Position numbers and translations under genes: made by a program. The notes below the pieces were generated by a model, which was not told the origin of the DNA, made no database searches, and saw only the letters and a program-made list of their open reading frames with translations. DNA of 64,000 nt from IMG/VR virus record IMGVR_UViG_3300044700_000691, positions 152,816-216,815 of that record; one strand, given 5' to 3'. Shown here in pieces: positions 1,274-47,685 of this stretch; within the stretch, counting starts at the first letter, position 1, and each line of letters begins with the position of its first letter.

Positions 1274-1627
1274 TTATTTTTGTTTGCTAGCCATCTTAGG
1301 ATCAACTGACTTAGTGATAGCTGTACCTTTAATAACTAATTTGCCAAATGCTGGATCAACTGACTTAGTGATAGCTTTACCTTTAGGCGCAGCTTCTGCT
1401 AAGTTTTGGTTAACAGACTTAGTGATTTTAGCACCTTTAGCGGCTTTAAGATCAGTCATTTTAGTGTCAACTGATTTTTTAATGCTAGAACCTTTAGGCA
1501 TATCTAATTTAGCCATTTTAGGATCAACGCTTTTTCCTAATCTAGAACCTGCAGCAGGCATAGATGCTAAGTTTTGGTTAACTTTTTCAGTTAGGAATTC
1601 TGTGTAAGACAATACTTGGTTTGCCAT
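1274..1627 (-). CDS. small basic repetitive protein, probable internal head protein
   Basis: N-terminal VLSYTEFLTE motif; six 17-19-aa repeats starting KSV(D/N); Lys-rich; downstream of a GATAAATA promoter. Confidence 0.7.
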   Translation of the reverse strand: MANQVLSYTEFLTEKVNQNLASMPAAGSRLGKSVDPKMAKLDMPKGSSIKKSVDTKMTDLKAAKGAKITKSVNQNLAEAAPKGKAITKSVDPAFGKLVIKGTAITKSVDPKMASKQK

Positions 1628-1861: not shown

Positions 1862-3451
1862 CTAAGCAACATACTCACCAGTTAAGTGTTTAACACCCGT
1901 TGCATTAGCACCGTCAACAATATTAAATTGTACGTACTGAGTTTGTGGATGCCATCCAGCTTCAACTAGAGCATATCTTGACTTCATTCCGATTTTCGGA
2001 GAGAATGTACCCTCTGAAATAGTTTGAAGAGATTCAGCCATGATGTAAGGCATGAATTTAAGTCCTGGCTCTTCGTCAGCACCTTTACGTCCGATAAGAA
2101 CAGTGTTGTTATCAAAACGTAAGTTTGGATCAACATAGATAGTTAAACCGTGAACTTTACCAGCAGGGTAAAGAGTTCCAGCAGTAGAACCTAAATCATT
2201 GTTGAATGGAGCGATTGAATAACCAGCAGCATCAGCCATAGCAGATGCAACTTTAGCAGAAACTACTGCGAAAGTACCAGCTCCGAAACGAGCTCTGTGA
2301 TAAATTAAGTTAGCAGATTCAAGAATCTTAGTAACTAATTTTCTTTGAGAAGTCGTTACGTTTTCAAAAGTACCAGAACCTGGTTGAACGTTAACGTTAG
2401 CAACATAACCTTCAGTTGCGTTAGCAAGTGTAGCATTAGTTGTAGCTAAGTTTTTAACTTTAGAAACGATTTCTTTGTTGATTGTTTGAGCAAGCTCATT
2501 AACAGCAACGTTCTCCAACATAGAGATTGCATCGAAATTCCAAACTCTGTTAAGATCTTGGATTTGTTCAACAGTTGCAGAGATAGAAACTTGAGAAGTT
2601 TTAGCCTCAACGAACTTAGTAAACATTTTAAGACCCATTTGACGGAATTTAGAACCTTCACCAGCTGCTCTATCCATAGATTGAGTATACTCATTTCCAG
2701 AAAGGAAAGGACCAGAGAAATCTGTGTGAGCTTCAGTTGAAGTCGAAGTGAATCCAGAGATGTGGTTTTCTAAAGCAGATACTAAATCAACTTTGTTAGC
2801 CGCATCTAAAGTTACACTGTTTAACACTTTACCAGCACCTAAGTAAGTAGCTAAAGTGATAGAATCATCAGAAGTAACTACTTTGAAGATCAATTGACCG
2901 TCAATACGTGAAGCACCTACGAATTGTAGTGTAAGTACTGCAGCTGTTCCAGCTCCATCACCATCAACTGTGTACTCAGTACCAGCTGTGAATGTAGCCT
3001 TTTCACCTGTAGTGAAATCAGCGATTTTGATCAAATATGGTTCGAATTCAGTACCTAAGTTACCACCTTGGTAAACATAATCTAGGTAAGGAAGGAAACC
3101 AACTGGAGAGTCCATAGGAACTACACCAACTAGGTCGAAACCAATTGTTTTTGCTGCTACTTGAATAGCAACTGGCAATAAACTTGGGAATTTATCACCT
3201 GAACCGTTTGCACCTGTTGTAGGAGCTAATGGGTTACCGATTCCACTGATAGAACCTGGTTGTTGATAGAATAAGCCTGGAGCAACTGTAGCTTCATTGA
3301 TTGAACCTGCGTTTTCGAACATTGCGTGATAGTGGCAATAATCTACTAACCAAGGACGTGAATCTGCGTTTACACCATAGCTTTCTAAAACTGGAGCCCA
3401 AGTTGACTTAATCGAAGAATCGTTTAGTCTTTTAAATACTTTTGTAGACAT
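1862..3451 (-). CDS. gp23: major capsid protein (T4 gp23-like)
   Basis: W.PVLE N-terminus, LLPVAIQVAAKTIGFDLVGVVPMDSPVG, ELAQTINKEI, YMPY/MPYI and KIGMKSRYAL motifs typical of gp23. Confidence 0.95.
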   Translation of the reverse strand: MSTKVFKRLNDSSIKSTWAPVLESYGVNADSRPWLVDYCHYHAMFENAGSINEATVAPGLFYQQPGSISGIGNPLAPTTGANGSGDKFPSLLPVAIQVAAKTIGFDLVGVVPMDSPVGFLPYLDYVYQGGNLGTEFEPYLIKIADFTTGEKATFTAGTEYTVDGDGAGTAAVLTLQFVGASRIDGQLIFKVVTSDDSITLATYLGAGKVLNSVTLDAANKVDLVSALENHISGFTSTSTEAHTDFSGPFLSGNEYTQSMDRAAGEGSKFRQMGLKMFTKFVEAKTSQVSISATVEQIQDLNRVWNFDAISMLENVAVNELAQTINKEIVSKVKNLATTNATLANATEGYVANVNVQPGSGTFENVTTSQRKLVTKILESANLIYHRARFGAGTFAVVSAKVASAMADAAGYSIAPFNNDLGSTAGTLYPAGKVHGLTIYVDPNLRFDNNTVLIGRKGADEEPGLKFMPYIMAESLQTISEGTFSPKIGMKSRYALVEAGWHPQTQYVQFNIVDGANATGVKHLTGEYVA

Positions 3452-3468: not shown

Positions 3469-5499
3469 TTAGTTTTGTGCTCTTCTTTTTAGAGCGTCGA
3501 GGTATGTGTTACCATAGCCTCTTTGATGTTCCGCAACTTTCTCAATCGAGATAAAACCTTCTCTACCTTGGCTTTCGTTGATGTGTTGCGCATTTTTATT
3601 TTGTTTTTCGAAATAAATTCTTTCATTAATTCCTCTTAGATCTCTGCTCTCCCAGAAGTTTTTAACTTGGTAAGGAGTGTTAAGAACAGTTAGGGAAGCT
3701 TGTGCTTCTAAGCGGCTCTTTTCTGCAGGGGTCATGCTTTCAAAAATATCTTTGAATTTAGTAGGCATGAATTTGATTAAGGTAGGAACGTTTTCTTGTT
3801 GTTTGTTAAGAACTGACTCAATAATTTGGATAACGTCTTCTTCTTTAAAATAAACTGCTCCAGAAAGAGCTTCTATAATAGCAGTTTTTTGTGTTTGATC
3901 TAAATTAAAGAATCTTGATTTATTATCTTCGTTAAGAAGTTTTAGGAATGGATATCTGCTTTCTAATACAGATTTAGCTGAGTTATCTTTAATATGCTTA
4001 ACAATTGCATTTACTGAACCAACTATATCGTTAACTTTAGAACCTTCAGCAACTTGGTAGTTTACTGATTCGTCTAATTTTTCGATTTGGCTAAATGCAG
4101 AGGCAGATTTGGTAGAAAGACCAGATTTACCGTCATTTAGTGATTCTGCAATATACTCAGAATATTTAATTCCTTTTTCAAGGTTTTCAGCAAGATAATT
4201 AGCGTAACCAACTGAGTGCTTTAAGTTTTCAGCAACGTATTCAGTGTATCTGATACCTTGTTCTGATTTTTCAGCAACATACTCAGTGTATTGAATTCCT
4301 TTATCAAGGTTTTCTGCTAAGTATTCTGTGTACTTAATATTTTTGTTTACGTTTTCTGCGATATGCTCAGAGTAATCAATTGCATTATTTAAGTTTTCGC
4401 CAACGTATTCAGAGTAACCGATACCTTGTTCAACTTTTTCAGCAAGATAATCCGAGTAATCGATTACCTTATTAACTTTCTCAGCAACATGCTCAGAATA
4501 GTCAATTGATTTGTTTAACATGCCAGAAAGGTAATTGTTATATTCAATTACTTTGCCAAGCTCGCTTGAAAGATAGTTAACGTACTCAACTAATTGGTTA
4601 TTAGTTGCAGGTGTGTTTTCTTCTTCAGCATTTAGATCTGTAACCAAATTCGGATCTTCATCTGTTTGGTCTTCTTCGGTAACTGCGAAGTTATCAACCA
4701 TTTTATCTACACTCTCCTTAAGAGAATCAAACTTGCCTTTAACAAGTTCAGAATATTGGTTGAACGCTTCTTTCGTTACAAACTCATTAGTCATGTGTTT
4801 GTTATTATTTTCCATAGGTTTTACTATCTCTTCATTATTTATCTTATAAACTTTGATCGATTCTGCGAGGTTTAAGCTTTCAGAAATATCTACCAATTTG
4901 TTTATAATTGAGCTTGATTTAATATTATCCAAAGATTCGAAAAGCATAGAATAATTGCTTTGGAAACTTTCGTTAACTGATCTTCTAAGAACTGCTTCGC
5001 TAAAACCAGGCTCAGCGACTAAGTCGTATGTGAATATTCTTTGGATTTTTACTTTACCCTCATTTGCTACTTGACCAGCAGCTCTTGAAGAGGTTGAAAT
5101 TGTACAGCCTGACTCAACTAGAGTTTTTGCAATCTGACCAGCCGGTGTATTTAGCAGACGTACTTTAATTTTTACGTTATTAGAATCTTGATCGTACCAT
5201 AATTTCTCAATTACGTGAGAAACATTCTTAAGTGAAACATCAAAATTTTGTGGATGATCTAACTCACCAAATAGTTGACCCTTTTCGATTTTCTCGTTTA
5301 GGTATTCTAGGTGTGGAAGATACTCAGCTTTTTCGTAGATTCGGTTGTTGTTATTCTTTGTGTCAAATACTGCACAAACCCCTTCCATAACAATGTCACC
5401 ATTCTCTGACTTAACTGTGTTTAGACCTTCATTTACTCTTTCAATAATGAAGAGCATATCTGAGGTATTTGTAATTTCGTTTACGTCTGTAAGGACCAC
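3469..5499 (-). CDS. gp21: prohead protease (gp21-like) fused to scaffold/core protein (gp22-like)
   Basis: N-terminal EGVCAVFDTKNNNNRIY, GELDHP, VSH, ISTSSRAAG and TYDLVAEPGFSEA are gp21 motifs; C-terminal coiled-coil repeats; immediately upstream of gp23; GTG start. Confidence 0.9.
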   Translation of the reverse strand: MVLTDVNEITNTSDMLFIIERVNEGLNTVKSENGDIVMEGVCAVFDTKNNNNRIYEKAEYLPHLEYLNEKIEKGQLFGELDHPQNFDVSLKNVSHVIEKLWYDQDSNNVKIKVRLLNTPAGQIAKTLVESGCTISTSSRAAGQVANEGKVKIQRIFTYDLVAEPGFSEAVLRRSVNESFQSNYSMLFESLDNIKSSSIINKLVDISESLNLAESIKVYKINNEEIVKPMENNNKHMTNEFVTKEAFNQYSELVKGKFDSLKESVDKMVDNFAVTEEDQTDEDPNLVTDLNAEEENTPATNNQLVEYVNYLSSELGKVIEYNNYLSGMLNKSIDYSEHVAEKVNKVIDYSDYLAEKVEQGIGYSEYVGENLNNAIDYSEHIAENVNKNIKYTEYLAENLDKGIQYTEYVAEKSEQGIRYTEYVAENLKHSVGYANYLAENLEKGIKYSEYIAESLNDGKSGLSTKSASAFSQIEKLDESVNYQVAEGSKVNDIVGSVNAIVKHIKDNSAKSVLESRYPFLKLLNEDNKSRFFNLDQTQKTAIIEALSGAVYFKEEDVIQIIESVLNKQQENVPTLIKFMPTKFKDIFESMTPAEKSRLEAQASLTVLNTPYQVKNFWESRDLRGINERIYFEKQNKNAQHINESQGREGFISIEKVAEHQRGYGNTYLDALKRRAQN
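4132..4593 (-). repeat. 11 x 14-aa (42-nt) tandem repeat in scaffold region
   Basis: Units such as SIDYSEHVAEKVNK, NIKYTEYLAENLDK, GIKYSEYIAESLND; 462 nt = 11 x 42. Confidence 0.9.
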
Positions 5500-5569: not shown

Positions 5570-6424
5570 CTATATAGTTTTATTTATTAAGCGTAGTAGG
5601 TCCTGCTTCTCGAGATCAGTTAGTTTATCAAAATTAGGTACCCTTGTATGAATTTTAAAGACATATGCACCTTTATTTTGAAACCCAGTAGCTAATCCTC
5701 GGCCTGGAATGGTTATTTGAATATCGCTAAAGGACTTAGCGCTAAGAGATTTTATCTTAAATTTTGTGCCAGACACAGATTTAAAGATTAGATTTTCAAT
5801 ATTAATTAACTCGGTTAAGTCTACTTCTCTGTTATCTATAATATTACCGGCTGCATCCATAACAATACCAGATGGTATTACTATTTCTAATAGGACATAT
5901 AGATTACCAATAAATGTGCGATTAAACATTGCACCTCCACCAAGTTTACCAGTATTTCCCATATTTTGGAAAGTTAATCTAGAAAATGCTCGATTACCAT
6001 CAAAAATTAATTGGTGTTTGGTTTTGTCTGGGCTAAGCTCTACACTAAAACGATTTGGGGTAGACTCGCCCTTTTTATTATAGACTACTTCAATAGTCTT
6101 ACCAGTTAAAAGGTCTTTAAGATCGATTTTTTGATTAACTACTATATCAAGATCAATACCCCAATTTTGGGTAAAAATATCGGTTGAGCCAAATCCGCTA
6201 AACATGTCACGAAGGTCCTCAAAGTTAGCACCGCCTTTATCGTAACCTTTACGCTTTTCTACATCTCCTAATACACCATAAGCTTCGGCGATTTCCTTAA
6301 ATTTGGAATCACCGTCAGGATTTTTATCAGGGTGATATTTAATGGCAAGTTTTCGATATGCCTTTTTAATATCTGCCTGATTGCATCCGCGCTCAACTTC
6401 TAGTATATTATAATAGTCTTTCAC
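5570..6424 (-). CDS. dnaJ: DnaJ-family co-chaperone (J-domain plus C-terminal domain, no Zn finger)
   Basis: DYYNILEV...[19 protein letters not shown]-domain with HPD motif. Confidence 0.92.
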
Positions 6425-6443
6425 TATAATTAATATACCTAAA

Positions 6444-7247
6444 TTACTTACCCACGGTAACTGTATCTGATAAAATTAATGGTTTTGCTAAACTTACAAC
6501 GCCTTTAGCTAGGCCTGGGGTCGACGGCATTTTGCCATCGATCATTGATGCAAGGGACTCAATTGTTGCCATAAGTGCATCTCCCATAACAGCTGGCTCA
6601 GTTAAGCCGCTTGCTCCAAGTCTAGTAAAGTCTCCTCTAAGCCATACTTGCTCAGATGTTACCCTAACCTCAGAGGTTGCTGTAATATCAACAGTTGAAT
6701 TTGCAATAATTTTAATAGTAGGACCCTCTAGTTCAATAATAGACTCAGTGTCTTTATGCTCAATTGTAATAGTTGAATCCTGAGCAATATTAATTCGGGA
6801 TTTTTTATTTTCGAATGTTAAGCCTTTGCCTACAGTAAACCACAATTTAAGCTGTTCATCGCCATCCCATAGGATAAAATGCGAACCTAAATATTCACCA
6901 TCCTTTTTTAATTCTTCCTGTAAGTCTGCCGCAAGTTCCTGTAACTGAGAATACTCAGGCGAATAAATGTCGCCTTGATCAAATGTTACAACTACAAGGG
7001 CTCCGTTTTTTGGAATAGAAATACTGGCAGCACCCTCTTTACCAAAAAATGTAGGTTTTGCCATTGGATTTGCCCAAGGAAGATCCTCAGTTTTTAGTGT
7101 ATCAAATACTCCATGCACTAAAATTTTACATCGACCCTGTTTAAGAGGATCGTTTGCATCAACAACTGTACCCATATACTTTTTTAAAATATAGTCAATC
7201 GTTGTGTCTGACGAGCGTTTAATATCTAGGTCTCTGTTTACAATCAT
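6444..7247 (-). CDS. gp5: baseplate central spike/hub protein (gp5 N-terminal OB-fold), no lysozyme domain
   Basis: [21 protein letters not shown]...LPWA...[16 protein letters not shown] motif of the gp5/VgrG OB-fold; beta-rich C-terminus. Confidence 0.8.
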
Positions 7248-8955: not shown

Positions 8956-10488
8956 TTAAATATTTTTTTCCGAGTCTAATTTATTATCATCACTAATTTC
9001 AAGCCATTCGCGTCTAACTAAAATAAGTTCAGTTGAATATTTAAATTCAGACGCTTCTGGGCTTCCATTAAATTCATATATTATATCTTTTACAATATAT
9101 GGTCCAGTCAAGTATAAATCAATTACTTCCCCTGATCCTTTGATTGAGGTGACGGGTTGTTCAAAGTTTGAATCTGGCGCAATTGCATCTGCTTCACCTG
9201 ATAATTGTCTCTTAATTAACACATCAACTTTACCACCTCGATAGATAGCTTGAGTTACTCCAGGCAGCTTAACAACCAAATAATTTTTTCCAAGTTCATC
9301 AGTATTATGGCTATTTAGTAATCTAGCAAATTTATAGTTTGCATGGCCGTTATTATAGTCAACTCCAACCCACCTACTAGTTTGTTCCTTTGAAAATGTA
9401 GCAAGCTTGGGTTTTTGATAAGTAGCATTTTTATTCTCAATTGTTTTTTCGCTCAATGGCTCAATATAGTGATTGATTGGCAGCTTATTTTCTAAATAAA
9501 ACTTTCTATCGTGCCACGTAATACTTTTCCTAAAGCTTTGTTTTGATAAAACCTCGCCGTGGTTAGAATACATTGCATAGTGTGCAATGTTGAATCCAGA
9601 ATGGGTGTCCGTGATTGACGAAGATAATAGTACATCGATTAACTCTGTGTCTTTAGGTTTATCGTCTTTTGATTCAGTCTTACTTACACTATTGACTGCA
9701 CTATATTGAGACTCCATTCCATCGCCGGCTGTTTGCATAACTTTAGTTTCTTTGCTAAGGGCTTTTTCATAATTAACAAAATTTAAAATATAATTAGTGT
9801 CGATAAAACATCCAAAAAAGCTCTTTTCGTTTTTATAGGCTCTAGCACAAATATCTTGTATGAAAGTTTCAATCGTTCCGTTTGGATTAATCCAAGTCAT
9901 TAGATCATCAGTTGAAGTTTCGTTTGTTGCAAAACCTAATTTTAGGTGATCGGCCAAACTTTTTAGTGCCTCCCATGATTTCTTTTTTGGAATACTTTGT
10001 ACAGTATTTCCATATATTCCAGGAACATATAGCTTTGCAGTAATTGTATAGATACTTTCAATGCGGCCTGCTCCAGTGTAAAGTGTACTTAACTCAGAGC
10101 TTACAATATTAGTAATTAAATAATCAGATCTAATTGGTTTTATTGCTGGCGAAAGGGACTTTATGTATAGTTTTAAAATAGGGTTGGTTCTTGGAAAATA
10201 CATTCCAGAAAATACTCCAGTATTATCAATAACACTTAGCGTCAGCTCTGGCAAAAATCCATTTTGATTTATAGAAAGAGACACTAGCCTATTTTGTGGA
10301 ACAACATAGTTATCAATTTCAACATAGGGTGCAATCAACCCAGTTACAGTTTGAATATTTGCGTTATTTGCGCGCTCGGTGGTTACTTCTGACTCTGACT
10401 CAAAACTTTCTGGATTTATATGAGAAATCCTTCTAATTTCTAAATTAGGTTGAGTAATCGCTAATATTGAATTTGGATCCAGTGCCAT
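8956..10488 (-). CDS. baseplate hub protein (gp27-like)
   Basis: Beta-barrel-like ends (LTLSVIDNTG; LPG...GGKVDV...LTGPYIVKDIIYEF...TELILVRRE); lies between gp53-like and gp5-like genes. Confidence 0.55.
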   Translation of the reverse strand: MALDPNSILAITQPNLEIRRISHINPESFESESEVTTERANNANIQTVTGLIAPYVEIDNYVVPQNRLVSLSINQNGFLPELTLSVIDNTGVFSGMYFPRTNPILKLYIKSLSPAIKPIRSDYLITNIVSSELSTLYTGAGRIESIYTITAKLYVPGIYGNTVQSIPKKKSWEALKSLADHLKLGFATNETSTDDLMTWINPNGTIETFIQDICARAYKNEKSFFGCFIDTNYILNFVNYEKALSKETKVMQTAGDGMESQYSAVNSVSKTESKDDKPKDTELIDVLLSSSITDTHSGFNIAHYAMYSNHGEVLSKQSFRKSITWHDRKFYLENKLPINHYIEPLSEKTIENKNATYQKPKLATFSKEQTSRWVGVDYNNGHANYKFARLLNSHNTDELGKNYLVVKLPGVTQAIYRGGKVDVLIKRQLSGEADAIAPDSNFEQPVTSIKGSGEVIDLYLTGPYIVKDIIYEFNGSPEASEFKYSTELILVRREWLEISDDNKLDSEKNI

Positions 10489-11057
10489 TATTTAAATATT
10501 TTTGATTCAATTAGGTTTTTTAACACATTTGATCTTGAAATTGGGGTAGGACAGTCCTGTTTATTAACCTTTGTAACATCTGCACCAAATATAACCTTTC
10601 CATTTTGAACTTTAATATTTTTATCGTTAGGCAGAGTCAAATTTGGCTGCGTCAAACTTGTTCCAAGCTTCTTTAAATATGAAAGTCTAGTTGAATCCCT
10701 TTTTGTAGCTAAAATTACGTTCGGCAAAGCTTTAACTGTGCCCTTATCTATAATATCTTCGGTTTTAACGAAATATGCATCAGGTGTATTTGGAACCCTA
10801 ATTAATTGATCTCTAACCAAACTAAATGGATTTGATATACCATTATATTTACACAAGATATCTGCATAGTTTTCAGTTCCATAATATAGAATTGATATTA
10901 AATCTGGTCGCATTTCTTCAATAGGATCAACTTTATGTAAAGTATAGTCGCTAGTTAACTGCTTACTATCAAACCTAACTGTACCTTTGCTAAGGATTTT
11001 TTGAGTAAAACTTCCTGAAAAAAATGGTTTATTTGATATAGTTTTAAATAATAACAT
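10488..11057 (-). CDS. gp53: baseplate wedge protein gp53-like (LysM-like)
   Basis: RPDLISILYYG...ADILCKYNGISNPFSL...IRVP. Confidence 0.8.
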   Translation of the reverse strand: MLLFKTISNKPFFSGSFTQKILSKGTVRFDSKQLTSDYTLHKVDPIEEMRPDLISILYYGTENYADILCKYNGISNPFSLVRDQLIRVPNTPDAYFVKTEDIIDKGTVKALPNVILATKRDSTRLSYLKKLGTSLTQPNLTLPNDKNIKVQNGKVIFGADVTKVNKQDCPTPISRSNVLKNLIESKIFK

Positions 11058-12948: not shown

Positions 12949-13668
12949 TTATCCGTGAAACGGATCGAGATCTGGATTAGGAATCATTTTCCAGCGTCTT
13001 TCTAGGTTCATGCCTTGGCCTCTAGCTAATTGAATCTCTGTTGAGTGATCTTTAATTGCATTTAGTGCACCAATATAATCACGTCGATCAACAAACGATT
13101 GAACATAGTCAGCAACATCATCAGTTAAAGAAACTCTATAAACAACTGGATGGCGCTGTTGATTAAAGCTGCAGCGCATCATCATCATATTTAGCTGACC
13201 ATTGTATGCTTGCATTACGCTCTTTCGGGTCGGGGCAGTTTCATCAGCAAGACCTAAATCATGGATTCTATCTAATTGATTTAGGTAATTATGATCAATA
13301 TTTTCTTTAGTAAAAGATTCTACACCATGACAATCTGCAATACCAAAGTACCAACTAGCTGGCTTCTTTGCTTCATTTAAAAAAGAAGAAAAGGTTAGTA
13401 CTCTACTTTCAGGCAACGGCTCATTTACATCAATTAGGTCTAGATCTGCATCGCGAAGATCGTAAATCTCGTCAAAGGTTGTACCTTCGAACTCAATAGG
13501 TTCTTCTAAATCGACCATGTATAAAGTTTGATCTGGTGCATAGTCTAATCTATAGACTTTGCCAATAGTAACAATTTTATTATCAATTGGGGCGCCTACC
13601 AGATTGAGACGGTCCATTGTATCTTTAGATAATCTAAGCTTAACTTTATCGCCGATTTCAAATGCCAT
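12949..13668 (-). CDS. hypothetical protein, N-terminal SH3/KOW-like domain, internal capsid-targeting-like motif
   Basis: FEIGDKVKL start; ESRVLTFSSFLNEA. Confidence 0.7.
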   Translation of the reverse strand: MAFEIGDKVKLRLSKDTMDRLNLVGAPIDNKIVTIGKVYRLDYAPDQTLYMVDLEEPIEFEGTTFDEIYDLRDADLDLIDVNEPLPESRVLTFSSFLNEAKKPASWYFGIADCHGVESFTKENIDHNYLNQLDRIHDLGLADETAPTRKSVMQAYNGQLNMMMMRCSFNQQRHPVVYRVSLTDDVADYVQSFVDRRDYIGALNAIKDHSTEIQLARGQGMNLERRWKMIPNPDLDPFHG

Positions 13669-14417: not shown

Positions 14418-14705
14418 TTATGACTTTTTATTTAGTTGGCGCTTTACCTCGGCTCTAACCTTTTCCATCTTTTTAGCATAGGCTGGATTATCATTACGAT
14501 TAAATACAATTTGCTGGTTAAGGCTACCTGTAATTTTTCTCATATCGCCGCCTCTAGTTTTAATTAACCATGAAGCTAAGGCTTTGATTCCAAGGCTTTT
14601 AAATCTACCATTTGCATCAGGGGCATTTGAATCGTGCCAATCTGGTGAGTTTTTGGTTTTTCTTGCCTCTGTAATAAATTCTGTGTATGTAAGTATATTA
14701 TTCAT
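14418..14705 (-). CDS. basic hypothetical protein, probable internal head protein
   Basis: True start MNNILTYTEFITEA at 14705, 4 nt after the upstream stop; very close to T4 CTS MKTYQEFIAE. Confidence 0.75.
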   Translation of the reverse strand: MNNILTYTEFITEARKTKNSPDWHDSNAPDANGRFKSLGIKALASWLIKTRGGDMRKITGSLNQQIVFNRNDNPAYAKKMEKVRAEVKRQLNKKS

Positions 14706-15251: not shown

Positions 15252-15596
15252 TTAGTATTCCTTTGGGTCTTCTTGAATTAGTTCCTTATCTTGAGAATCG
15301 TTAACTTCATTAATTAAAAAGTTAAATACCTCTTCTACGTCATCTTTTGATGTAGCAATATGGTCAGCTGCCCATGCGTGTCCGTTTTTCAAAATTTCAT
15401 CAACACTAGACTCGTCCATTTCTAATAAAAGATCAACACATCTTTTAATTGTTTTAAGATTTCCAAAAAACATATAATTTTCATATTCAGCTTCATGTGA
15501 ATCTTCTTTGCTGTGTATTGGTTCAGCTGCTAGTTGAATTTGAGTTGGCTCGAAATCTTCTTGTGAAAATGATTCGAAAGTTTTAATTTTTTGCAT
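15252..15596 (-). CDS. hypothetical protein with capsid-targeting-like N-terminus
   Basis: MQKIKTFESF; acidic; tightly packed in operon. Confidence 0.7.
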   Translation of the reverse strand: MQKIKTFESFSQEDFEPTQIQLAAEPIHSKEDSHEAEYENYMFFGNLKTIKRCVDLLLEMDESSVDEILKNGHAWAADHIATSKDDVEEVFNFLINEVNDSQDKELIQEDPKEY

Positions 15597-15597
15597 T

Positions 15598-17211
15598 TTA
15601 CTTTTTATTTAAATTTTTATAAAAGCTAGTAAAGTCTAAAATATTTCTATTAGCTTTTTTAGATTTCTTTGGTTGAAAATTATCACCAGAACCTGGTGAA
15701 GTTTGAGTTGGCGCAATTGGATTACCCATGCCGCCGATACTTGCTGGTGTTTGCATTGCTACACCTGGTGATGCAACATCCTCTTTAACTTGACCGGATC
15801 CAACTTTAGTTGCTCCTTTAATTTTACTTTGTGGTGCATCTAGTCCGCTTTCTGCACTTGTAAATAAGAAGCGTGTCCACTTTTCAGCTTTTAATTGAGC
15901 CTCTTTACCACCAGTCACCTTGGCAGTTCTTGAAATGGTTCTTCCAATAATAGGTAAAGTTGCTTGTCTAAATCTTGCGAGTTGAGCTCCAAGATTCTTT
16001 TGCTCTTCTCCTTGATATTCGACAGTTGCCGATAGCGTACCAAGATAGGTTCCAATCTTTAGTAGATAATTAATTCGGCTGGAGTCTAACATTTGTTTAG
16101 ACGTAATTGCAATTTTAGTTCTTTCAAATAGAGGAAGCTTAATTTCTGGAGAATAGGCAACTCCCTTATAACGACTTATGTCAAGGTCAGTTTTATATTT
16201 TCCAAGACGAGTCCTTGCCTCTAAGTATGCCTCAATTGCCTCAACCATATATTGTTTCTTGGCCGAATCGTCGAGAGTCTGTAACATAGTTCGACGTTTT
16301 GTAATAGCATCAATTTCGCCTCGCTCATCCGTCATAATCATAATACGAACTTTTACAAATTGAGACTCTAATGTATTTAGGTCTGGCCAATTTCTAAGTT
16401 CTTCGATTGCATTTCTAATAATAACGTCACGTTTAACTAATTTCTCAGCCTTACCGCCAGTTCGCTTATTAAAATCCTCTGACGATTTCTTGAAGTCGTC
16501 AACATCATTATCCATTTCCGTTTGAACTTCTTCCCATTCAACATCAATAATATCTGGTTCAGGCTTCTTTTTATCCTCATCTTTATTTGAAAAGTCTGAA
16601 ATAATATAGGCTACCTTTACCGAGTCTTCTGCTGTTTTTCTAAAGTCTTCAGAATCTGCAGTCGTACCATCCATTTTTTCCTTGGCAGAGCTAACTAATG
16701 TTTTAGTAACCTCAGCTTCAGTTTTCTTTTGATCAGTAAATGAAATTTTAATTTTATCAAGCAGGTCATTAACCTCGGCTGTCCAATTGCTCTCCTCAAT
16801 GGTTTGATATGCTTCCCATACAATAGCCATTCGACCTTTGTATGCTCGTATTCTCTCTAACTGTAATTCAATGTCTTCGCCATCTTTAATCATTTGATCA
16901 AGAACTTCGGTTTCAATTTTTAAAGTTTGAGAAATAAAATCAATATACTTATTTAAAATATCAATCCATTCTTTATTAAGAAAAGCTTGGCTTAATTGCT
17001 GAAGAACCTGAGGATCAGTCTTTGCCTTATTTAAAATATCATTTTCGATAAGTCTTGATAAAAACTCATCGACCTTCTTCATGATATCCTCCTCCTTTTT
17101 ATTGGAGCCTTTGGCAAATGTGATAATATCAGAAATTTCATTTCCAATAATAATTAATTCAGATTCTAATAGAAGCTGTTCGAGGATATGTATGTGTTTA
17201 AATTTCAGCAT
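15598..17211 (-). CDS. 537-aa helical protein with C-terminal copy of the major capsid N-arm
   Basis: Long ORF; C-terminal 35 aa are 18/35 identical and ungapped to the gp23 N-arm; ends with ILDFTSF motif. Confidence 0.8.
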   Translation of the reverse strand: MLKFKHIHILEQLLLESELIIIGNEISDIITFAKGSNKKEEDIMKKVDEFLSRLIENDILNKAKTDPQVLQQLSQAFLNKEWIDILNKYIDFISQTLKIETEVLDQMIKDGEDIELQLERIRAYKGRMAIVWEAYQTIEESNWTAEVNDLLDKIKISFTDQKKTEAEVTKTLVSSAKEKMDGTTADSEDFRKTAEDSVKVAYIISDFSNKDEDKKKPEPDIIDVEWEEVQTEMDNDVDDFKKSSEDFNKRTGGKAEKLVKRDVIIRNAIEELRNWPDLNTLESQFVKVRIMIMTDERGEIDAITKRRTMLQTLDDSAKKQYMVEAIEAYLEARTRLGKYKTDLDISRYKGVAYSPEIKLPLFERTKIAITSKQMLDSSRINYLLKIGTYLGTLSATVEYQGEEQKNLGAQLARFRQATLPIIGRTISRTAKVTGGKEAQLKAEKWTRFLFTSAESGLDAPQSKIKGATKVGSGQVKEDVASPGVAMQTPASIGGMGNPIAPTQTSPGSGDNFQPKKSKKANRNILDFTSFYKNLNKK

Positions 17212-17630
17212 TAGTCTAGGGTTAATCTGTATGCAAGTTTATTCTTTAATGATAAAAACTCGTCTCTTACATTGTATAATTCAGTGTTTGTTTCTTGATC
17301 AAATATTTCACAAAAATCTTGTTGAAATACTCTTTCGATATTTTGAATAAAAATTGGCATTGCTTGATCGTAGTCCATAACTAGAATTGCGCAGCCTCCA
17401 ACTTTAAATCTGCCAAATTTACCAATGATCTGTTCAGCAATTTCATCAACTAATCCTAAGAAATCATCATAAAATGCACCAAATGCATTGTGTTGAGCTT
17501 CGTTTGTAGTTTGCCAATGTAAAATATGAGCCTGGTCTCTAATTTGCAGTAGACTTAACATAAATGTAGATACATCCATGGCATCAGTCTGTGGCTCGTC
17601 TAACCCGCTTTGTAATTCAAATGGAATCAT
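17211..17630 (-). CDS. ferritin/Dps-like protein (DUF5856-like)
   Basis: QAHILHWQT...HNAFGAFYDDFLGLVDEIAEQIIG, a four-helix ferroxidase-type pattern; start moved to MIPF (ATGA overlap with upstream small ORF). Confidence 0.7.
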   Translation of the reverse strand: MIPFELQSGLDEPQTDAMDVSTFMLSLLQIRDQAHILHWQTTNEAQHNAFGAFYDDFLGLVDEIAEQIIGKFGRFKVGGCAILVMDYDQAMPIFIQNIERVFQQDFCEIFDQETNTELYNVRDEFLSLKNKLAYRLTLD

Positions 17631-17806
17631 TTCTTTGTAGTATGTTTTTTCCAATCGGCGAATGGTTTAATCCAAAAGGTCCGATTAGTTTCCTTTTGTA
17701 AAAGATCCATAATCTTATTGTCTCCACTTGGATGCTGCATAACTGCATTTTCCAATCTGGCTTTACCCTGAAGATAAGCTTTGTAGTTTTTCTGAGAAGA
17801 ATTCAC
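17627..17806 (-). CDS. 59-aa protein missed by ORF track (MNSSQKNYKAYLQGKARLENAVMQHPSGDNKIMDLLQKETNRTFWIKPFADWKKHTTKK)
   Basis: GTG start 20 nt after AATAAATA; fills the gap; ATGA overlap with next gene; C-terminal IKPFADW motif. Confidence 0.7.
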   Translation of the reverse strand: MNSSQKNYKAYLQGKARLENAVMQHPSGDNKIMDLLQKETNRTFWIKPFADWKKHTTKK

Positions 17807-17848: not shown

Positions 17849-20743
17849 TTATTCTTGAGGAGCAGTTGAGAATGAATCCATGTTAAGATCTATTCCCAAT
17901 AGAGAGTCAGATGAAGTAGATTTAGGTCTAATATTATTAGCCTGTTCAATCTTAAAGTATTTAAGCTGATCATCTGTAATCTTTCCGTTAATTAAAACAT
18001 AGTCTCCTGTGTGTTTACTAACTGCCATAAAATATGTGCCGTCCTGTAAATATCGATCAAACTCAATCTTTAATACTCCATTTAAATAGACACCAGTATT
18101 AAATGTACCGTCTTCTGCGATTGCACCGTTAAATACAGCAGTCAACTCATCTTTGTAGTTCTTATAGATTAGGTTGAATCCGGCTGCTAAAATTTCAACA
18201 ACCTCTTCTTTAGTTGAAGCTTGAACAGCAGCTGTAATTCCTTGGCTAAAATATTCTTTTCTTGGAGTAGCAGAAGCTGATGGTGTAAATGCCGTAGAGT
18301 TTTCAAAATACTCTGGCACTTCCTGTTTAGCTGCAGTAAATAGATCGGCTAAACCTTTTCTAATATAGTTTCCAGTATCTGCTCCCATACCAGTACCGCT
18401 TTGTCCAGTTAATCTAAAATTATCTCCGCTTGATTTAATTTCAATTAAATCTGTCTTAATTTTAATATCGCCCTTATCTCTATTTCCAGCGTTTACCGCA
18501 TCCTTAATTAAGATTGACATTAAAATTTCGCCGCGACCAATGTTTACATTACCAACTGACCCAATTAAATTAAAAAGCTGATCATATAGTGCTGGGCTAA
18601 GACCTGTCGTATCAAATAAGGTTTTTAGATTGCCGTTTGGGCTATTTGTAATATCTTCAAATGTAATAGTTGGATTATCTAAATACACCAATAGGTCATC
18701 GTCTTGATCAAGATCGTCCGCAATTGAAACAATGGTTTTTGCTAAATCTTTATAGCCTTTACCTGTGCCGAGAATATCAAATAACTCTTTATTTACGTCG
18801 TTATGGGTTCTCTTTAATAGTTTTTCAATCTTTTTATAGAGAGCCTCATTATATGGTGCATCAATAATTAAATCAAGCAGGTCACTTTTCTTTTTATCAA
18901 GCTCTGCAACTGAAATCGACTCAGTTAAAAGGGATTCTTCAATCTCCTTTGTCATATTATAAAACTCTGAGTGTAGAGGCTTACTGGTTATGTTTTTATA
19001 CAAAACAAAATCTTGGTTTTTAACTGAATTAACAAGCTCTGCTTCTAGTTCAATTTTAGGTACTTCTACTACCTTTAACTGAGATGGAATTTTTGCGTAT
19101 GGAGCTCTCTTATTAATACGATTTAGGTCAATTACTAAATCTGGCACAAACTCTAAGTTGGTTGCAATTGCTTTAATTGAATAACCTTGGCCAATTGCAC
19201 CAATTAATTCATCTATTCCAACTGAATCTACAGTTGAACCGCCTACTACATAATCTGAAGTTTTTGATAATCGGTCAATTGAATTTTTGACTGTTTCCGA
19301 AGACATTGGAAAAGCTGAACTTCTTTGTCCAGGGTGATACGCTACCATTAAACAAGGAACATCATACTTTCCTTTAATATTAGCTGCGATTTTTTCGTGT
19401 TCTTTACTTAGAGGTTGAAATTTATCTAGGTAAATAACGATTTCAATATCTTTTTTTTTAGTTTGATTTGCTTGAAATTGACTAAAAAAATCTGAGGCAT
19501 CCTCATCTGTACCAAAAAATTGATTAAATGTTGGAAAAAATGCCTCGTTTAATTTATCCTCTGCTGCAAGTTGAACTTTAGCAATTTGGGATTTTAGAGT
19601 TTCTTTCATAGTTTTATTAAAAAAGGTTGAGCTAACTCTAATATTTTTCTTTCTAAATGTATTTAAGAAAACTCTGTACAATTCCTTAAGAGTTTTATCT
19701 GAATCGATTAATCTAATTACCATATCATCATTGATCAAGACACGATTAACATCAAACTCCGGCTTATTTAGGAATTCTGGAGTTGTTATTTCAAGACCGC
19801 GATATTTGCTACCGTGCTCCTGTATAAAATCTTTAAATATTGCATTTATAATTTGAATATAACGTCTTTCAAATGTTGTACCATCTGGCTTAATTGCATC
19901 AAGGTCTGCTTGTGAATAGGTTTCAATAAAATTCATTAAGTCAGCTGTCATAATCCAAATGTAATCATCAGTCTTTGGTGCAGCTACTCTGTCTTGTGCC
20001 TTTTCCTTTGCTCTTGCTTGGAAAACCGGGTCAACTAATTTTGCTAAAAATACTGAATCTTCTCCGCCTGGTTCATAGAATCTAAAAACAATACCTTCGA
20101 TATCTTTGTCAGCGGTGTCTCTTAAAAAAGAGGTTCTAAGTTCAGGATTAAGAACATTAATAATGTATTTGGTAAAAGATGCAGTTTTAAATTTTCCAAC
20201 TAACTCATCAAGCGGAGTATAGACAAAATCTAAAATTTTCTCTTTTTGATCATCTGTTAGTTTTCCTTGAAAAATAATTGGTGGGCGCTCGATATCTAAA
20301 ATATCCGCCCATTTGTCTAATTCTGCCTTATCTTGGATAGTCTCAGCCTGTTCGCCAGCTTTATCCAATATATGAATATAACTTAGGATCAAGTGGTTTT
20401 TAGGTAATCTATCGTATTGTATTGATTGAGCAGTCGGTGAACTAAAATACTCCATTCCAAAATGATAGTTACATGGAAGTTTTTCAATTGAGTCAGCCGA
20501 TAATTCATCGAAGTGTTTAAGTGCAGGGTTATAGTATGAACTTAGGACACGATCTACACCTGTTAATTTAGTATTACGTTTAAAAAATTCAAATGGTTCT
20601 TCGGAATTTCCACAATTTCTTTGTGCACCAAAAAATGCACCGTCCATTTTTTCGTTAACAATAACTTCTTTATTAAGAAGAGCCTCTAAAAATTCTTTGC
20701 CCTTTTTTTCGTAAATGTCCTTTAAGTGGTTTAGTCCTGCCAT
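17849..20743 (-). CDS. 964-aa multidomain protein: RNA/DNA-ligase-like nucleotidyltransferase + degenerate cytidylyltransferase + PD-(D/E)xK-like nuclease
   Basis: EKMDG (motif I), GMEYF, IEGIVFR (IV), AKLVDPVF (V); YLDKFQPLSKEH (HxGH-like); GRGEIL...GDIKI...IEIKS. Confidence 0.65.
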   Translation of the reverse strand: MAGLNHLKDIYEKKGKEFLEALLNKEVIVNEKMDGAFFGAQRNCGNSEEPFEFFKRNTKLTGVDRVLSSYYNPALKHFDELSADSIEKLPCNYHFGMEYFSSPTAQSIQYDRLPKNHLILSYIHILDKAGEQAETIQDKAELDKWADILDIERPPIIFQGKLTDDQKEKILDFVYTPLDELVGKFKTASFTKYIINVLNPELRTSFLRDTADKDIEGIVFRFYEPGGEDSVFLAKLVDPVFQARAKEKAQDRVAAPKTDDYIWIMTADLMNFIETYSQADLDAIKPDGTTFERRYIQIINAIFKDFIQEHGSKYRGLEITTPEFLNKPEFDVNRVLINDDMVIRLIDSDKTLKELYRVFLNTFRKKNIRVSSTFFNKTMKETLKSQIAKVQLAAEDKLNEAFFPTFNQFFGTDEDASDFFSQFQANQTKKKDIEIVIYLDKFQPLSKEHEKIAANIKGKYDVPCLMVAYHPGQRSSAFPMSSETVKNSIDRLSKTSDYVVGGSTVDSVGIDELIGAIGQGYSIKAIATNLEFVPDLVIDLNRINKRAPYAKIPSQLKVVEVPKIELEAELVNSVKNQDFVLYKNITSKPLHSEFYNMTKEIEESLLTESISVAELDKKKSDLLDLIIDAPYNEALYKKIEKLLKRTHNDVNKELFDILGTGKGYKDLAKTIVSIADDLDQDDDLLVYLDNPTITFEDITNSPNGNLKTLFDTTGLSPALYDQLFNLIGSVGNVNIGRGEILMSILIKDAVNAGNRDKGDIKIKTDLIEIKSSGDNFRLTGQSGTGMGADTGNYIRKGLADLFTAAKQEVPEYFENSTAFTPSASATPRKEYFSQGITAAVQASTKEEVVEILAAGFNLIYKNYKDELTAVFNGAIAEDGTFNTGVYLNGVLKIEFDRYLQDGTYFMAVSKHTGDYVLINGKITDDQLKYFKIEQANNIRPKSTSSDSLLGIDLNMDSFSTAPQE

Positions 20744-35260: not shown

Positions 35261-36637
35261 TTATAATTCAGTCTGTATTGACTCGACTGCTTCTTTGTAT
35301 TCTTCCATAGTTACTCCAATTTCGCTTGCTTGCTGGTCTGGAGACATAGTCAATGATCTTTGTTGATTATCTGCGTTAGCCAACCATTGTGTAACTTTAG
35401 TCATTACCTCTGGAGATACAGATTCGTACACAGCAGATTCCATTAAACCATTTCTATAACAACCAAGTGCCTCTTTAACGTAATCATTATATTCTATCGC
35501 AGAATCGTCGTTATGTATTTCTAGAGCTTCATTACAAAGTTTTTCGCAAACCTCATAAATTGATTCGCAAGTAGATTCATAACAAGCCGACTCGTAATTT
35601 GCATATTCATTAACCGTAATACCGTCATCTACCATTTCATACATACATTTTTCCATATATGCACAGGCTTCATTAACATAACCATCGAACTTATGTTCAG
35701 GGTCTTCATCATCTTCATACATTGAAGCATCTGAACAAGTAGATTCGCATATTGATTCAATTAGGTGATGTGCAGCTTCAGATAACATTGATTTACTACC
35801 ATCATGGCAAGTATGACCTAGGCCTTCTGCCATATACTCAGAATTTCCTGGGTTATTCATTATTCTTCCATTGGGAAGTGTTACACGGTCCTTTCCGATT
35901 CCATATTCAAAGTTATTTGAATTGTGACCTAATTCGTTTGGAATTTCGTCAGCTTCCTCATCATCACTATACGTATCACAGTGTTCTCCGCAATCAGAGC
36001 AAATATCTCCCATCATAACAGCAGCTCCGCAACAGTCTGAAGATACTCCATACTCGTACGCATCTCTAGGATCCCATGATTCATTTGTACGTGACTTAGC
36101 GCCATCATAAATAGTTTTTAACCATGATTCAAGTTCTTTATTATCACCTGCATCTAGGTTAGAATATTCTTTTTTGAATGCTCTAACAAAACTTCTAAAA
36201 GTTTTAGATTCTTGAGCAAGTAGATCAATTTCAGACATTGCGCCTTCTTTAATAGCAACAGCTTTCTTTTTAGGGGCACCAGATTTAGCGTCGGCTGCCG
36301 CTTTCTTCATAGACTCCTTTTTATCTCCGTCCTTATCTAAATCTAAAAAATCAGGTTTGCCTGATTTACCAGGTGCAGCCTTTTTACCGGCTGGCTTTTT
36401 ACCAGCTTTCTTATCTAGATATGCCTGTAAACCCGCGTTAAGCTGTTTCTTTTCATTTAAGAAATCTGCAAATCTTAATACTTTGTTTTCTGCGATTTGT
36501 GGTTCTTGTCCACATGTTTCGCAATCTTCGGTTACTTCTGGATTACGGCCAGCTTCATTATCAAACTGTTCGTCCTCTGAGTAGTAATTTGGCTTCTTTA
36601 AAAAAGAAGGTAAGTCTTTGTTAGAAAATTTTCCCAT
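35261..36637 (-). CDS. mosaic acidic/Cys-rich protein, probable internal head protein
   Basis: VLRFADFLNE motif, KPDFLDLDKDG module, SDCC...CSDCGEHC module, duplicated CESTC domain; GATAAATA at 36659-36666. Confidence 0.7.
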   Translation of the reverse strand: MGKFSNKDLPSFLKKPNYYSEDEQFDNEAGRNPEVTEDCETCGQEPQIAENKVLRFADFLNEKKQLNAGLQAYLDKKAGKKPAGKKAAPGKSGKPDFLDLDKDGDKKESMKKAAADAKSGAPKKKAVAIKEGAMSEIDLLAQESKTFRSFVRAFKKEYSNLDAGDNKELESWLKTIYDGAKSRTNESWDPRDAYEYGVSSDCCGAAVMMGDICSDCGEHCDTYSDDEEADEIPNELGHNSNNFEYGIGKDRVTLPNGRIMNNPGNSEYMAEGLGHTCHDGSKSMLSEAAHHLIESICESTCSDASMYEDDEDPEHKFDGYVNEACAYMEKCMYEMVDDGITVNEYANYESACYESTCESIYEVCEKLCNEALEIHNDDSAIEYNDYVKEALGCYRNGLMESAVYESVSPEVMTKVTQWLANADNQQRSLTMSPDQQASEIGVTMEEYKEAVESIQTEL

Positions 36638-36661
36638 TTTAACTAATTATTTCATGATTAT

Positions 36662-47463: not shown

Positions 47464-47685
47464 TTAAGCGGTTGGTTCTTCTAGTAGTTGAAGACCTTCT
47501 TCAGGCTCAACTGCAGGCTGTTCCATATTTGGCATCATAGCCGGTTCAGCTTGAGGCATCATTGGCTCTTCCATTGGTTGTTCTTGAGCAATTGGCATCT
47601 CTGGTTGCATAGCTGGCATTGCATCAACAGCAGGTTGATCTTTAGCTACAAACTCATCGAAACTCATAATACGATTGTCCATCAT
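47464..47685 (-). CDS. small P/E/M-rich protein with capsid-targeting-like N-terminus
   Basis: RIMSFDEFV; perfect TATAAATA upstream. Confidence 0.7.
   Translation of the reverse strand: MMDNRIMSFDEFVAKDQPAVDAMPAMQPEMPIAQEQPMEEPMMPQAEPAMMPNMEQPAVEPEEGLQLLEEPTA

What the first reader, a model, noticed from the sequence alone, without database searches (positions are those of the whole stretch)
15676..15780. Accessory protein ends in an ungapped 35-aa copy of the major capsid protein N-arm
Seen: gp23 ATVAPGLFYQQPGSISGIGNPLAPTTGANGSGDKF (3188-3292) aligns without gaps to DVASPGVAMQTPASIGGMGNPIAPTQTSPGSGDNF in the 537-aa ORF, 18 of 35 residues identical. In both, the segment starts right after a gp21-type site (INE| in gp23, VKE| here), and here it is followed by a capsid-tag motif (ILDFTSF). 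I found no other similarity between the two proteins. Inference: molecular mimicry, where a released peptide or tethered arm occupies gp23 N-arm sites on the inner capsid wall, anchoring cargo or tuning capsid size, expansion or stability.
Basis: partly seen in the sequence, partly recalled or inferred. Interest (0 to 1): 0.74.

Follow-up and report, generated by a model that had tools for sequence, protein, structure and literature searches.

The report
Capsid N-fist copy in core protein
A 537-residue helical protein of an uncultured aquatic jumbo phage ends in an old, conserved copy of the first 35 residues of the mature major capsid protein, set between a likely protease cut site and a T4-type capsid-targeting tag; this most likely serves to place and process the protein inside the prohead, and mimicry of the capsid lattice is not shown.

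Summary
On the minus strand, residues 478-512 of the 537-aa ORF (window 15598-17211) align without gaps to residues 54-88 of the gp23-type capsid protein (window 1862-3451). Identity is 18/35, or 20/41 when extended; BLASTP E is 2e-10, z is 15.9 against composition-matched shuffles, and profile-profile probability is 97%. Nothing else in the two proteins or the 217-kb genome matches.

The segment corresponds to the T4 'N-fist' (gp23* residues 66-91), not the N-arm proper. The host protein belongs to an unnamed family with no Pfam or PHROG match: at least 80 clusters at 50% identity, all from uncultured phages. Its C-terminal module is the best-conserved part: [V/T]-x-E, then the fist-like segment, a poly-Lys run and an I..F..F tail. 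The tail resembles T4's capsid targeting sequence and the 14-aa repeats of this phage's protease-scaffold fusion.

The copy tracks its cognate capsid protein only weakly, and each family keeps its own signature. I read it as a prohead-core targeting and processing module derived from the capsid protein's maturation site (confidence about 0.4). True lattice mimicry remains possible (about 0.2). In T4 the mature fist lies on the outer surface, not the inner wall.

The parts
15598..17211 (-). Accessory protein (ACC, P0001, 537 aa) of an unnamed family
   Evidence: ORF. No Pfam or PHROG hit. 28 close homologues and at least 80 cluster representatives carrying the C-terminal module. Syntenic after a DUF5856 gene in all clades.
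15781..17211 (-). Acidic all-helical body, aa 1-477 (pI 5.35)
   Evidence: The AF2 model shows helices through about residue 455, with pLDDT 70-89 over most of 20-300. Foldseek finds only uncharacterised phage proteins and generic helical repeats. Composition.
15781..15789 (-). Predicted prohead-protease site V475-K476-E477 | D478
   Evidence: E477 is invariant in 21/21 sequences and P3 is I/L/V/M/T in 21/21, the only such site in the protein. The same position relative to the copy as INE53|A in the capsid protein. Cleavage itself is inferred.
15676..15780 (-). Capsid N-fist-like segment, aa 478-512 (the finding)
   Evidence: Predicted disordered, pLDDT 28-38.
15646..15675 (-). Basic linker QPKKSKKANR (a poly-Lys run of 4-8 K in relatives)
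   Evidence: Alignments; hits. The tail 478-537 has pI 10.0 and no Glu.
15601..15645 (-). CTS-like C-terminal tail NILDFTSFYKNLNKK
   Evidence: I524, F527 and F530 are invariant. Predicted helix 527-533. Resembles the N-terminal tags of small ORFs and the T4 CTS MKTYQEFIAE (PMC8442874).
1862..3451 (-). Major capsid protein, gp23 type (P0002, 529 aa)
   Evidence: PF07068 E 9e-48. phmmer hits T4 gp23 structures.
3293..3451 (-). Capsid protein propeptide, aa 1-53, ending in INE53
   Evidence: Sequence. By analogy with T4 gp23 cleavage after Glu65; inferred.
3188..3292 (-). Capsid protein N-fist equivalent, aa 54-88
   Evidence: Window MCP K87-F88-P89 aligns to T4 gp23 I91-G92-P93. The T4 N-fist is residues 66-91 (PMC7136217).
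3469..5499 (-). Prohead protease (S77) fused to a scaffold-like domain, 676 aa
   Evidence: PF03420 E 2e-12 and phrog_207. Conserved next to the capsid gene in all clades.
4129..4590 (-). Eleven 14-aa tandem repeats I-x-Y-[ST]-E-[YH]-[LVI]-A-E-..., aa 304-457 of the protease-scaffold
15252..15596 (-). Small ORF starting with a CTS-like tag (MQKIKTFESFSQE), directly downstream of the ACC gene
14418..14705 (-). Small ORF starting with a CTS-like tag (MNNILTYTEFITE)
   Evidence: Using the internal Met as the start removes the overlap with the upstream ORF.
1274..1627 (-). 117-aa repeat protein starting with a CTS-like tag (MANQVLSYTEFLTE), just after the capsid gene

Best explanation
The 537-aa protein is a prohead-core component, either a scaffold-associated or an internal protein. 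Its last 60 residues form a composite targeting-and-processing module. An ancestor copied the capsid protein's maturation site together with the following N-fist region onto the C-terminus of a helical protein.

Proposed mechanism:
1. In the prohead, the tail (basic run plus I..F..F helix) works like a T4 capsid targeting sequence. It associates with the repeat domain of the protease-scaffold fusion.
2. The fist-like segment engages the same core partner that holds the capsid protein's N-terminal region inside the unexpanded shell. That partner is most simply the protease-scaffold itself, and this presents the V-K-E|D bond to the protease.
3. Cleavage then separates the acidic 477-aa body from the basic, Glu-free 60-aa tail.

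Shown: the homology, the conservation, the conserved Glu and P3 residue, the tag similarity and the synteny with head genes. Inferred: presence in the prohead, the cleavage, the identity of the partner, and the fate of the two fragments.
For: - Homology to the capsid segment is significant and confined to the site plus the fist.
- 11 of 25 invariant columns of the family fall in the last 61 residues.
- E477 with its P3 residue is the only [ILVMT]-x-E conserved in 21/21 sequences.
- The half of the copy next to the site is the part kept by the most divergent clade (L028, G002, G003, P0136: E-xxx-PG-xxx-Q-x-P).
- The tail matches N-terminal tags of at least 8 small ORFs and the 14-aa repeats of the protease-scaffold. 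All resemble the T4 CTS MKTYQEFIAE (PMC8442874).
- C-terminal propeptides removed by the prohead protease are known for T4 Alt and gp21 (PMC9026906).
- In T4 the region 66-105 is inside and flexible in the unexpanded head and is thought to contact the scaffold core (PMC9546572).
- The gene sits in a co-directional late block with baseplate-like genes, the protease-scaffold and the capsid gene.
- The body is all-helical and acidic, as scaffolds are, while the tail is basic.
Against: - There is no proteomic or structural evidence that the protein is in proheads or is cut.
- One lineage (G005) has no Glu next to the copy.
- In T4, prohead-protease substrates share only a short L/I-x-E motif, so a 35-residue prime-side docking element would be unusual.
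- Matching of the Glu-to-PG spacer between the two proteins holds in many lineages (4/4, 6/6, 3/3) but fails in G012, G002, G003 and G017.
- The complex prediction of protease-scaffold with the tail gave no answer; this is not evidence either way.
Confidence: 0.4

Rival explanations
1. Lattice mimicry. After cleavage the 60-aa tail has a capsid-like new N-terminus. Its fist-like part binds the capsid lattice where a capsid N-fist would bind. This could happen at places where a fist is missing or displaced, such as around the portal or at vertices. The basic run and helix stay inside with the DNA or cargo, so the shell is stabilised or its contents tethered.
For: - The copy spans the whole fist and its turn-forming residues (PG, Q.P, G.G, P.APT, GSGD.F), not just the cleavage site.
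- It starts at the same distance from the cut Glu in most genomes, including shared +2 and -1 spacer variants.
- Within-genome similarity between ACC and MCP exceeds between-genome similarity: 13.5 vs 12.5 of 26 positions, permutation p about 5e-4, or 0.01-0.03 with one representative per clade.
- Some ACC tails carry the capsid-type insertion TPFVNGVK (P0135, P0174).
- The tail has no Glu, so it would survive the protease.
- In T4 the five portal-facing fists are disordered for lack of a partner capsomer (PMC7136217), so special sites do exist.
- No gp24-like paralogue is found in the 217-kb record.
Against: - In T4 the mature fist is on the outer surface and every subunit brings its own fist (PMC9958956, PMC9546572), so free sites are few.
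- The hydrophobic positions differ systematically between the families: LF[YFL]QQ vs V[AS]xQ[TV].
- The L028 clade replaced the second half of the copy with an unrelated conserved motif (MDTF.LAGPGKK), while its capsid protein kept the full fist.
- Fine-scale changes do not track: L022 MCP has GQGAAFAPT vs ACC GSGNPLAPT, and L004 ACC has GMGDAIAPT vs MCP SIGNPLAPT.
Confidence: 0.22
2. Assembly regulator by competition. The fist-like segment competes with capsid N-termini for the scaffold or the protease. In this way it sets the timing of maturation or the shell geometry and size.
For: - In T4, contacts between the gp23 N-terminal region and the scaffold influence inter-capsomer angles and head length (PMC9546572).
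- The copy includes the cleavage site.
- The family is confined to phages with large capsids: relatives' records reach 250-275 kb.
Against: No data exist on dose or stoichiometry. The sequence evidence does not distinguish this from the best explanation.
Confidence: 0.12
3. The shared segment is recognised by a third factor unrelated to the capsid lattice or the protease, for example the phage DnaJ/host DnaK chaperone system or a modifying enzyme. Alternatively it is merely a conserved flexible spacer.
For: A phage DnaJ gene is conserved beside the protease-scaffold and capsid genes in all clades. The segment is predicted disordered and is rich in P, G, S and T.
Against: A spacer would not hold 13 invariant or nearly invariant positions across two protein families. 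Nothing links DnaJ to this motif.
Confidence: 0.1
4. The match is a chance or low-complexity resemblance.
For: The composition is biased towards P, G, S, T and A.
Against: z = 15.9 against composition-matched shuffles. E is 2e-10 with composition adjustment. HHalign gives 97.3%. The match is conserved in both families across deep clades.
Confidence: 0.01

Closest known systems
T4 capsid targeting sequences and protease-removed propeptides (IPI-III N-terminal CTS MKTYQEFIAE; C-terminal propeptides of Alt and gp21)
   Same: A short amphipathic aromatic tag next to a [L/I/V]-x-E protease site, on proteins packaged in a gp23/gp21-type prohead. A C-terminal location has a precedent in Alt and gp21 (PMC9026906, PMC8442874).
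   Different: Here the tag is joined to a 35-residue copy of the capsid protein's own N-fist and a poly-Lys run. I found no such element described in the T4 papers I read. Targeting and cleavage are untested here.
T4 gp23* N-fist (residues 66-91)
   Same: The capsid partner of the match occupies the same position: the first residues after the maturation cut, immediately before the conserved ...AFD.(C/V)GV.PM arm.
   Different: There is no recognisable sequence similarity to the T4 fist itself. The accessory copy sits at the C-terminus of a non-capsid protein.
Scaffolding proteins whose C-terminal basic helix binds the coat protein N-arm (P22, 80alpha; the SaPI1 CpmB C-terminus copies the helper scaffold's C-terminus)
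   Same: A helical, acidic body with a basic, helix-forming extreme C-terminus. Another assembly protein's terminal peptide is reused to enter the same assembly (my own knowledge; the scaffold-N-arm contacts are cited in PMC9546572).
   Different: Those cases copy a scaffold terminus. This case copies part of the capsid protein itself. No fold or sequence relation was found.
Fused protease-scaffold proteins of jumbo phages (for example Tenacibaculum phage PTm1 ORF300, 'prohead core scaffolding protein and protease')
   Same: The same gene order, protease-scaffold then gp23-type capsid gene.
   Different: PTm1 and LR756500 capsid proteins keep only GMGA...GSGD of the fist. No ACC homologue was found in the phage genome collection.

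Membership tests
gp23-type major capsid protein (partner of the match) | Match to PF07068 above the gathering score and to solved T4 gp23 | tested here: met
   163.9 bits against a cut-off of 24.4. phmmer vs 6uzc/5vf3 gives E 4e-14.
T4-type CTS-bearing, protease-processed core or internal protein | Short CTS-like aromatic motif resembling MKTYQEFIAE | tested here: met
   The ACC tail ILDFTSFYKNL (RIMEFSEFLKN in relatives) resembles the tags of at least 8 small ORFs and the scaffold repeats. This rests on similarity only and has no statistical model.
T4-type CTS-bearing, protease-processed core or internal protein | [L/I/V]-x-E cleavage site bounding the targeting peptide | tested here: met
   VKE477|D. 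The Glu is invariant in 21/21 sequences and P3 is conserved. One distant lineage (G005) lacks an adjacent Glu.
T4-type CTS-bearing, protease-processed core or internal protein | Physical presence in proheads or virions and actual cleavage | not testable with these tools
   The phage is uncultured and no proteome exists. The complex prediction gave no answer.
Scaffolding protein | Elongated helical protein encoded in the head module whose terminus binds the coat protein | tested here: inconclusive
   All-helical body in the AF2 model (pLDDT 62) and a location in the late block. Coat binding was not tested. A separate scaffold-like domain is already fused to the protease.
   The excess within-genome similarity is weak. 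Spacer length matches in most lineages but not all. The families keep different signatures.
   This needs at least four capsid subunits (about 1900 residues) plus the peptide, above the 1000-residue limit.

The most novel reading that the evidence does not exclude
After cleavage, the Glu-free 60-residue tail is a free-standing capsid N-fist. It inserts into the capsid lattice at positions that lack a fist of their own, such as around the portal or the vertices. Its poly-Lys run and helix stay inside on the DNA or cargo. It would then be a protein 'rivet' that couples the shell to its contents in large-capsid phages.
Probability: 0.2. Interest if true: 0.8.

Novelty: new variant of a known kind. 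Interest (0 to 1): 0.55.

Why it matters
Jumbo-phage heads package many proteins, and how each is sorted into the prohead is largely unknown outside T4 and phiKZ-like phages. This clade shows a readable sorting code with three parts:
- a scaffold domain built of 14-residue repeats;
- many small proteins that begin with one such repeat;
- one conserved protein whose tag also contains a copy of the capsid protein's maturation site and N-fist.

If the fist copy is a docking element, it points to what holds the capsid N-terminus inside the prohead, a contact that cannot be seen in the T4 structures because the region is disordered there. If it is a true lattice mimic, it would be a new way to stabilise large capsids or tether their contents. 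Either way, the 60-residue module is a candidate tag for loading foreign proteins into such capsids, and it gives a defined peptide to look for by mass spectrometry.

Tried and rejected
- Complex prediction of protease-scaffold (676 aa) with the ACC tail (68 aa) gave 'no answer' (score 0.00). The controls were not run. This is not evidence for or against binding.
- A model with the capsid protein was not attempted, because the T4 fist site involves four subunits and exceeds the size limit.
- tblastn of the ACC, P0118 and P0135 against 50,697 phage genomes found no match.
- IMG/VR scans with P0118 and P0135 found nothing.
- Contig look-ups for P0135 and P0118 did not reach the capsid gene. The cognate capsid sequence of the 'PGGDGMN.PGMI' ACC group and of the insertion-bearing ACCs therefore remains unknown. 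Records behind the assembly loci are not held, so they could not be extended.
- The last word-based protein search listed only capsid homologues at least 66% identical in the N-terminus, so it did not reach those groups.
- My first impression of strict spacer-length co-variation (3/3, 4/4, 6/6) did not survive more pairs. G012, G002, G003 and G017 break it.
- Recent gene conversion is rejected by codon comparison.
- Foldseek of the ACC model found only family members and generic helical repeats.
- An alternative genetic code is not needed: all ORFs are open under table 11.

Full report
**Setting.** The window is the last 64 kb of a 216.8-kb virus record with 36% GC. Table 11 reads all long ORFs open. 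The genes of interest lie on the minus strand in one co-directional block. In order of transcription they are:
- an RNA-ligase-like gene (17849-20743);
- DUF5856 (17211-17654);
- the accessory protein ACC (15598-17211);
- several small ORFs;
- baseplate-like genes (10488-11057 wedge/sheath-like; 6444-7247 gp5-type OB);
- a DnaJ gene (5570-6424);
- a 676-aa S77 protease fused to a scaffold-like domain (3469-5499);
- a gp23-type major capsid protein (1862-3451).

The nearest capsid proteins in the phage genome collection belong to an uncultured 462-kb phage (40% identity) and to Lak megaphages (33%). Close relatives are aquatic metagenome contigs.

**The observation.** It is confirmed in every detail once read on the minus strand.
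- ACC 478-512 and MCP 54-88 share 18 of 35 residues without gaps.
- BLASTP extends the match to 20/41 (ACC 472-512, MCP 48-88) with E 2e-10.
- Composition-matched shuffles reach at most 10 identities, and the ungapped score lies 15.9 SD above them.
- Profile-profile comparison of the two families gives a single hit, ACC 467-514 vs MCP 43-90, at 97.3% probability and E 2e-11, and nothing elsewhere.
- No third copy exists in the 217-kb record or in any of the roughly 21-kb related loci.
- The DNA is only 58% identical, and half of the identical residues use different codons. The copy is therefore old and maintained at the protein level.

**What the capsid segment is.** phmmer aligns window MCP K87-F88-P89 to T4 gp23 I91-G92-P93. 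MCP 54-88 therefore corresponds to the T4 'N-fist' (residues 66-91; PMC7136217) rather than to the N-arm proper. What is known for T4:
- In the unexpanded head, residues 66-105 are flexible, point inward and probably contact the scaffold core.
- After expansion they are externalised and bind between capsomers on the outer surface.
- There they also form the Soc site (PMC9546572, PMC9958956).

**What the accessory protein is.**
- It has no Pfam or PHROG match.
- AF2 with a 21-sequence alignment gives an all-helical body to about residue 455, a disordered stretch at 461-522 (the copy) and a short helix at 527-533.
- Foldseek finds only uncharacterised proteins of uncultured phages and generic helical repeats.
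- The family extends to proteins only 21-28% identical overall (loci L026, L027, L030, L028). These occupy the same position after DUF5856, or in L028 a rearranged but nearby position.
- 11 of the 25 invariant columns lie in the last 61 residues.
- The conserved module reads: [V/T]-x-E | 3-6 residues | PG...Q.P.SI.G.G..(A/P)PT | 7 residues | GSGD.F | Lys-rich run | I..F..F(Y/L/I)K.
- E477 with a hydrophobic or Thr P3 is the only such site conserved in all 21 sequences.
- A cut there would give an acidic 477-aa body (pI 5.35) and a basic 60-aa tail with no Glu (pI 10.0).

**Breadth.** An exhaustive profile search of 1.84 billion representatives with the module (A4) returns 80 clusters at E <= 1e-3.
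- Nearly all are 490-790-aa proteins carrying the module at the extreme C-terminus, with the poly-Lys run and the tail.
- The others are two proteins with an internal copy (P0125, P0141), one with it near the N-terminus (P0173), short fragments under 350 aa, and capsid proteins or capsid fragments (P0130, P0149, P0158, P0166).
- Some ACC tails carry the 11-20-residue insertion (TPF.(N/G)G.K...) that capsid proteins of other clades have between APT and GSGDKF (P0135, P0174, P0126, P0139).
- One large group has PGGDGMN.PGMI in place of PGVA.QTPASI. I could not reach the capsid genes of this group or of the insertion-bearing tails.

**Does the copy track its capsid protein?** I assembled 25 genomes holding both genes: 12 from contig look-ups and IMG/VR loci and 13 from an IMG/VR scan with A4 plus whole-record searches. 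Removing two duplicate pairs leaves 23, of which 19 were alignable over the full block.
- Deep level: there are shared derived states. Both proteins have GNP.APT in the near clade, against G(P/A)I(T/S) in the L026/L027/L030 clade. GSA-PG occurs in both proteins only in G011, and GA-PG in both only in L027.
- Spacer length: the Glu-to-PG spacer is 4/4 in most genomes, 6/6 in the L030/G013/G014 clade, and 3/3 in L028, G009 and G010.
- The rule is not strict. G012 (7 vs 3), G002 (5-6 vs 2), G003 (4 vs 5) and G017 (2-3 vs 4) break it, and G005 has no Glu nearby.
- Within the near clade, single changes do not track (L022, L004).
- A permutation test on the block PG-4 to PG+21 gives 13.5 identities within genomes against 12.5 between genomes. 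p is about 5e-4 with 19 genomes, and 0.01-0.03 with one representative per deep clade. Relatedness of the genomes makes these p-values optimistic.
- Each family keeps its own signature: PGLF[LYF]QQPGSI in 110 of 120 capsid homologues (PGLF.Q.PGS[IV] in 118) against PG[VL][AS]xQ[TV]P[AG]SI in ACCs.

In sum, this is an ancient partial duplication followed by separate but loosely coupled evolution.

**The tail and the scaffold.**
- The protease-scaffold has eleven exact-period 14-residue repeats, I-x-Y-[ST]-E-[YH]-[LVI]-A-E-[NK]-[LV]-x-x-x, at aa 304-457.
- At least eight small ORFs begin, right after Met, with one such unit (MANQVLSYTEFLTE, MNNILTYTEFITE, MKNQVKQFSEFINE and others).
- These closely resemble the T4 capsid targeting sequence MKTYQEFIAE, which is cut off by gp21 after the Glu (PMC8442874, PMC9026906).
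- The ACC tail (NILDFTSFYKNL; RIMEFSEFLKN in relatives) is of the same kind but at a C-terminus. That has a precedent in the C-terminal propeptides of T4 Alt and gp21 (PMC9026906).

**Interpretation.** The most economical reading is that the ACC is a prohead-core protein. Its C-terminal 60 residues would direct it into the core and present a defined bond to the protease. The fist-like part would be derived from, and do the same job as, the equivalent part of the uncleaved capsid protein inside the prohead. Three points support this reading:
- the half of the copy next to the cut site is the part retained in the most divergent clade;
- the T4 literature places this capsid region inside, on the core, before expansion;
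- the hydrophobic positions differ between the two families.

I put this at about 0.4. In its favour, the whole fist is copied, the new N-terminus would be capsid-like, the tail would resist the protease, and tracking is non-zero. A competition or timing role (about 0.12) and a third-factor or spacer role (about 0.1) cannot be excluded. Chance is excluded. The one complex prediction I could run (protease-scaffold plus tail) gave no answer.

**Novelty.** Targeting tags and protease-removed propeptides are known. I found no description of a conserved copy of the capsid protein's own maturation site and N-fist on a core protein in the literature searches I ran, and the family is unannotated. I rate it a new variant of a known kind, of moderate to good interest, with a defined experimental path.

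Noticed in passing
window 4129-4590 (-), aa 304-457 of the protease-scaffold: Eleven exact-period 14-residue tandem repeats, I-x-Y-[ST]-E-[YH]-[LVI]-A-E-[NK]-[LV]-x-x-x. Each contains a [LVI]-A-E protease-type site. They are conserved in all clades examined.
   Followed up: partly
window 1274-1627, 14418-14705, 15252-15596, 47464-47685, 47770-48147, 52080-52460 (all -); genome C1 11959-12612 (+) and 41827-42435 (-): At least eight small ORFs begin right after Met with a motif like one scaffold repeat and like the T4 CTS MKTYQEFIAE (for example MANQVLSYTEFLTE, MNNILTYTEFITE, MKNQVKQFSEFINE). They are probably a set of packaged internal proteins. Internal copies occur in window 12949-13668 and 35261-36646.
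   Followed up: partly
window 5570-6424 (-): A phage DnaJ (J domain plus a weak DnaJ_C match) sits between a gp5-like baseplate gene and the protease-scaffold. It keeps this place in every related clade, which suggests chaperone help for head assembly.
   Followed up: no
window 1274-1627 (-): The 117-aa ORF just after the capsid gene consists of repeats of the type (I)TKSVDPKMAKL, following a CTS-like start.
   Followed up: no
whole record G000 (216,815 bp): tblastn finds no second gp23-like (gp24-type vertex) gene. The record may be incomplete, since relatives reach 250-275 kb.
   Followed up: partly
window 3293-3451 (-), MCP aa 34-46: The capsid propeptide contains VDYCHYHAMFEN (VDYAHNHAIF[ED]N in relatives). 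It loosely resembles a scaffold repeat (IDYSEHVAEKVN) and may be the capsid protein's own core-binding element. The resemblance is weak and was judged by eye only.
   Followed up: no
MCP N-termini in L026, L027, L030, L028 and IMG/VR loci L088-L115: Capsid proteins outside the near clade carry an 11-20-residue insertion (TPF.(S/T/A)G.K...) between APT and GSGDKF. The window's clade lacks it, which is why the match to the accessory protein is ungapped here.
   Followed up: yes
window 17211-17654 (-) and 17849-20743 (-): A DUF5856 gene (PHROG label: starvation-inducible transcriptional regulator) overlaps the ACC start codon. A 964-aa RNA-ligase-domain protein lies upstream. Both are syntenic with the ACC across clades.
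   Followed up: no
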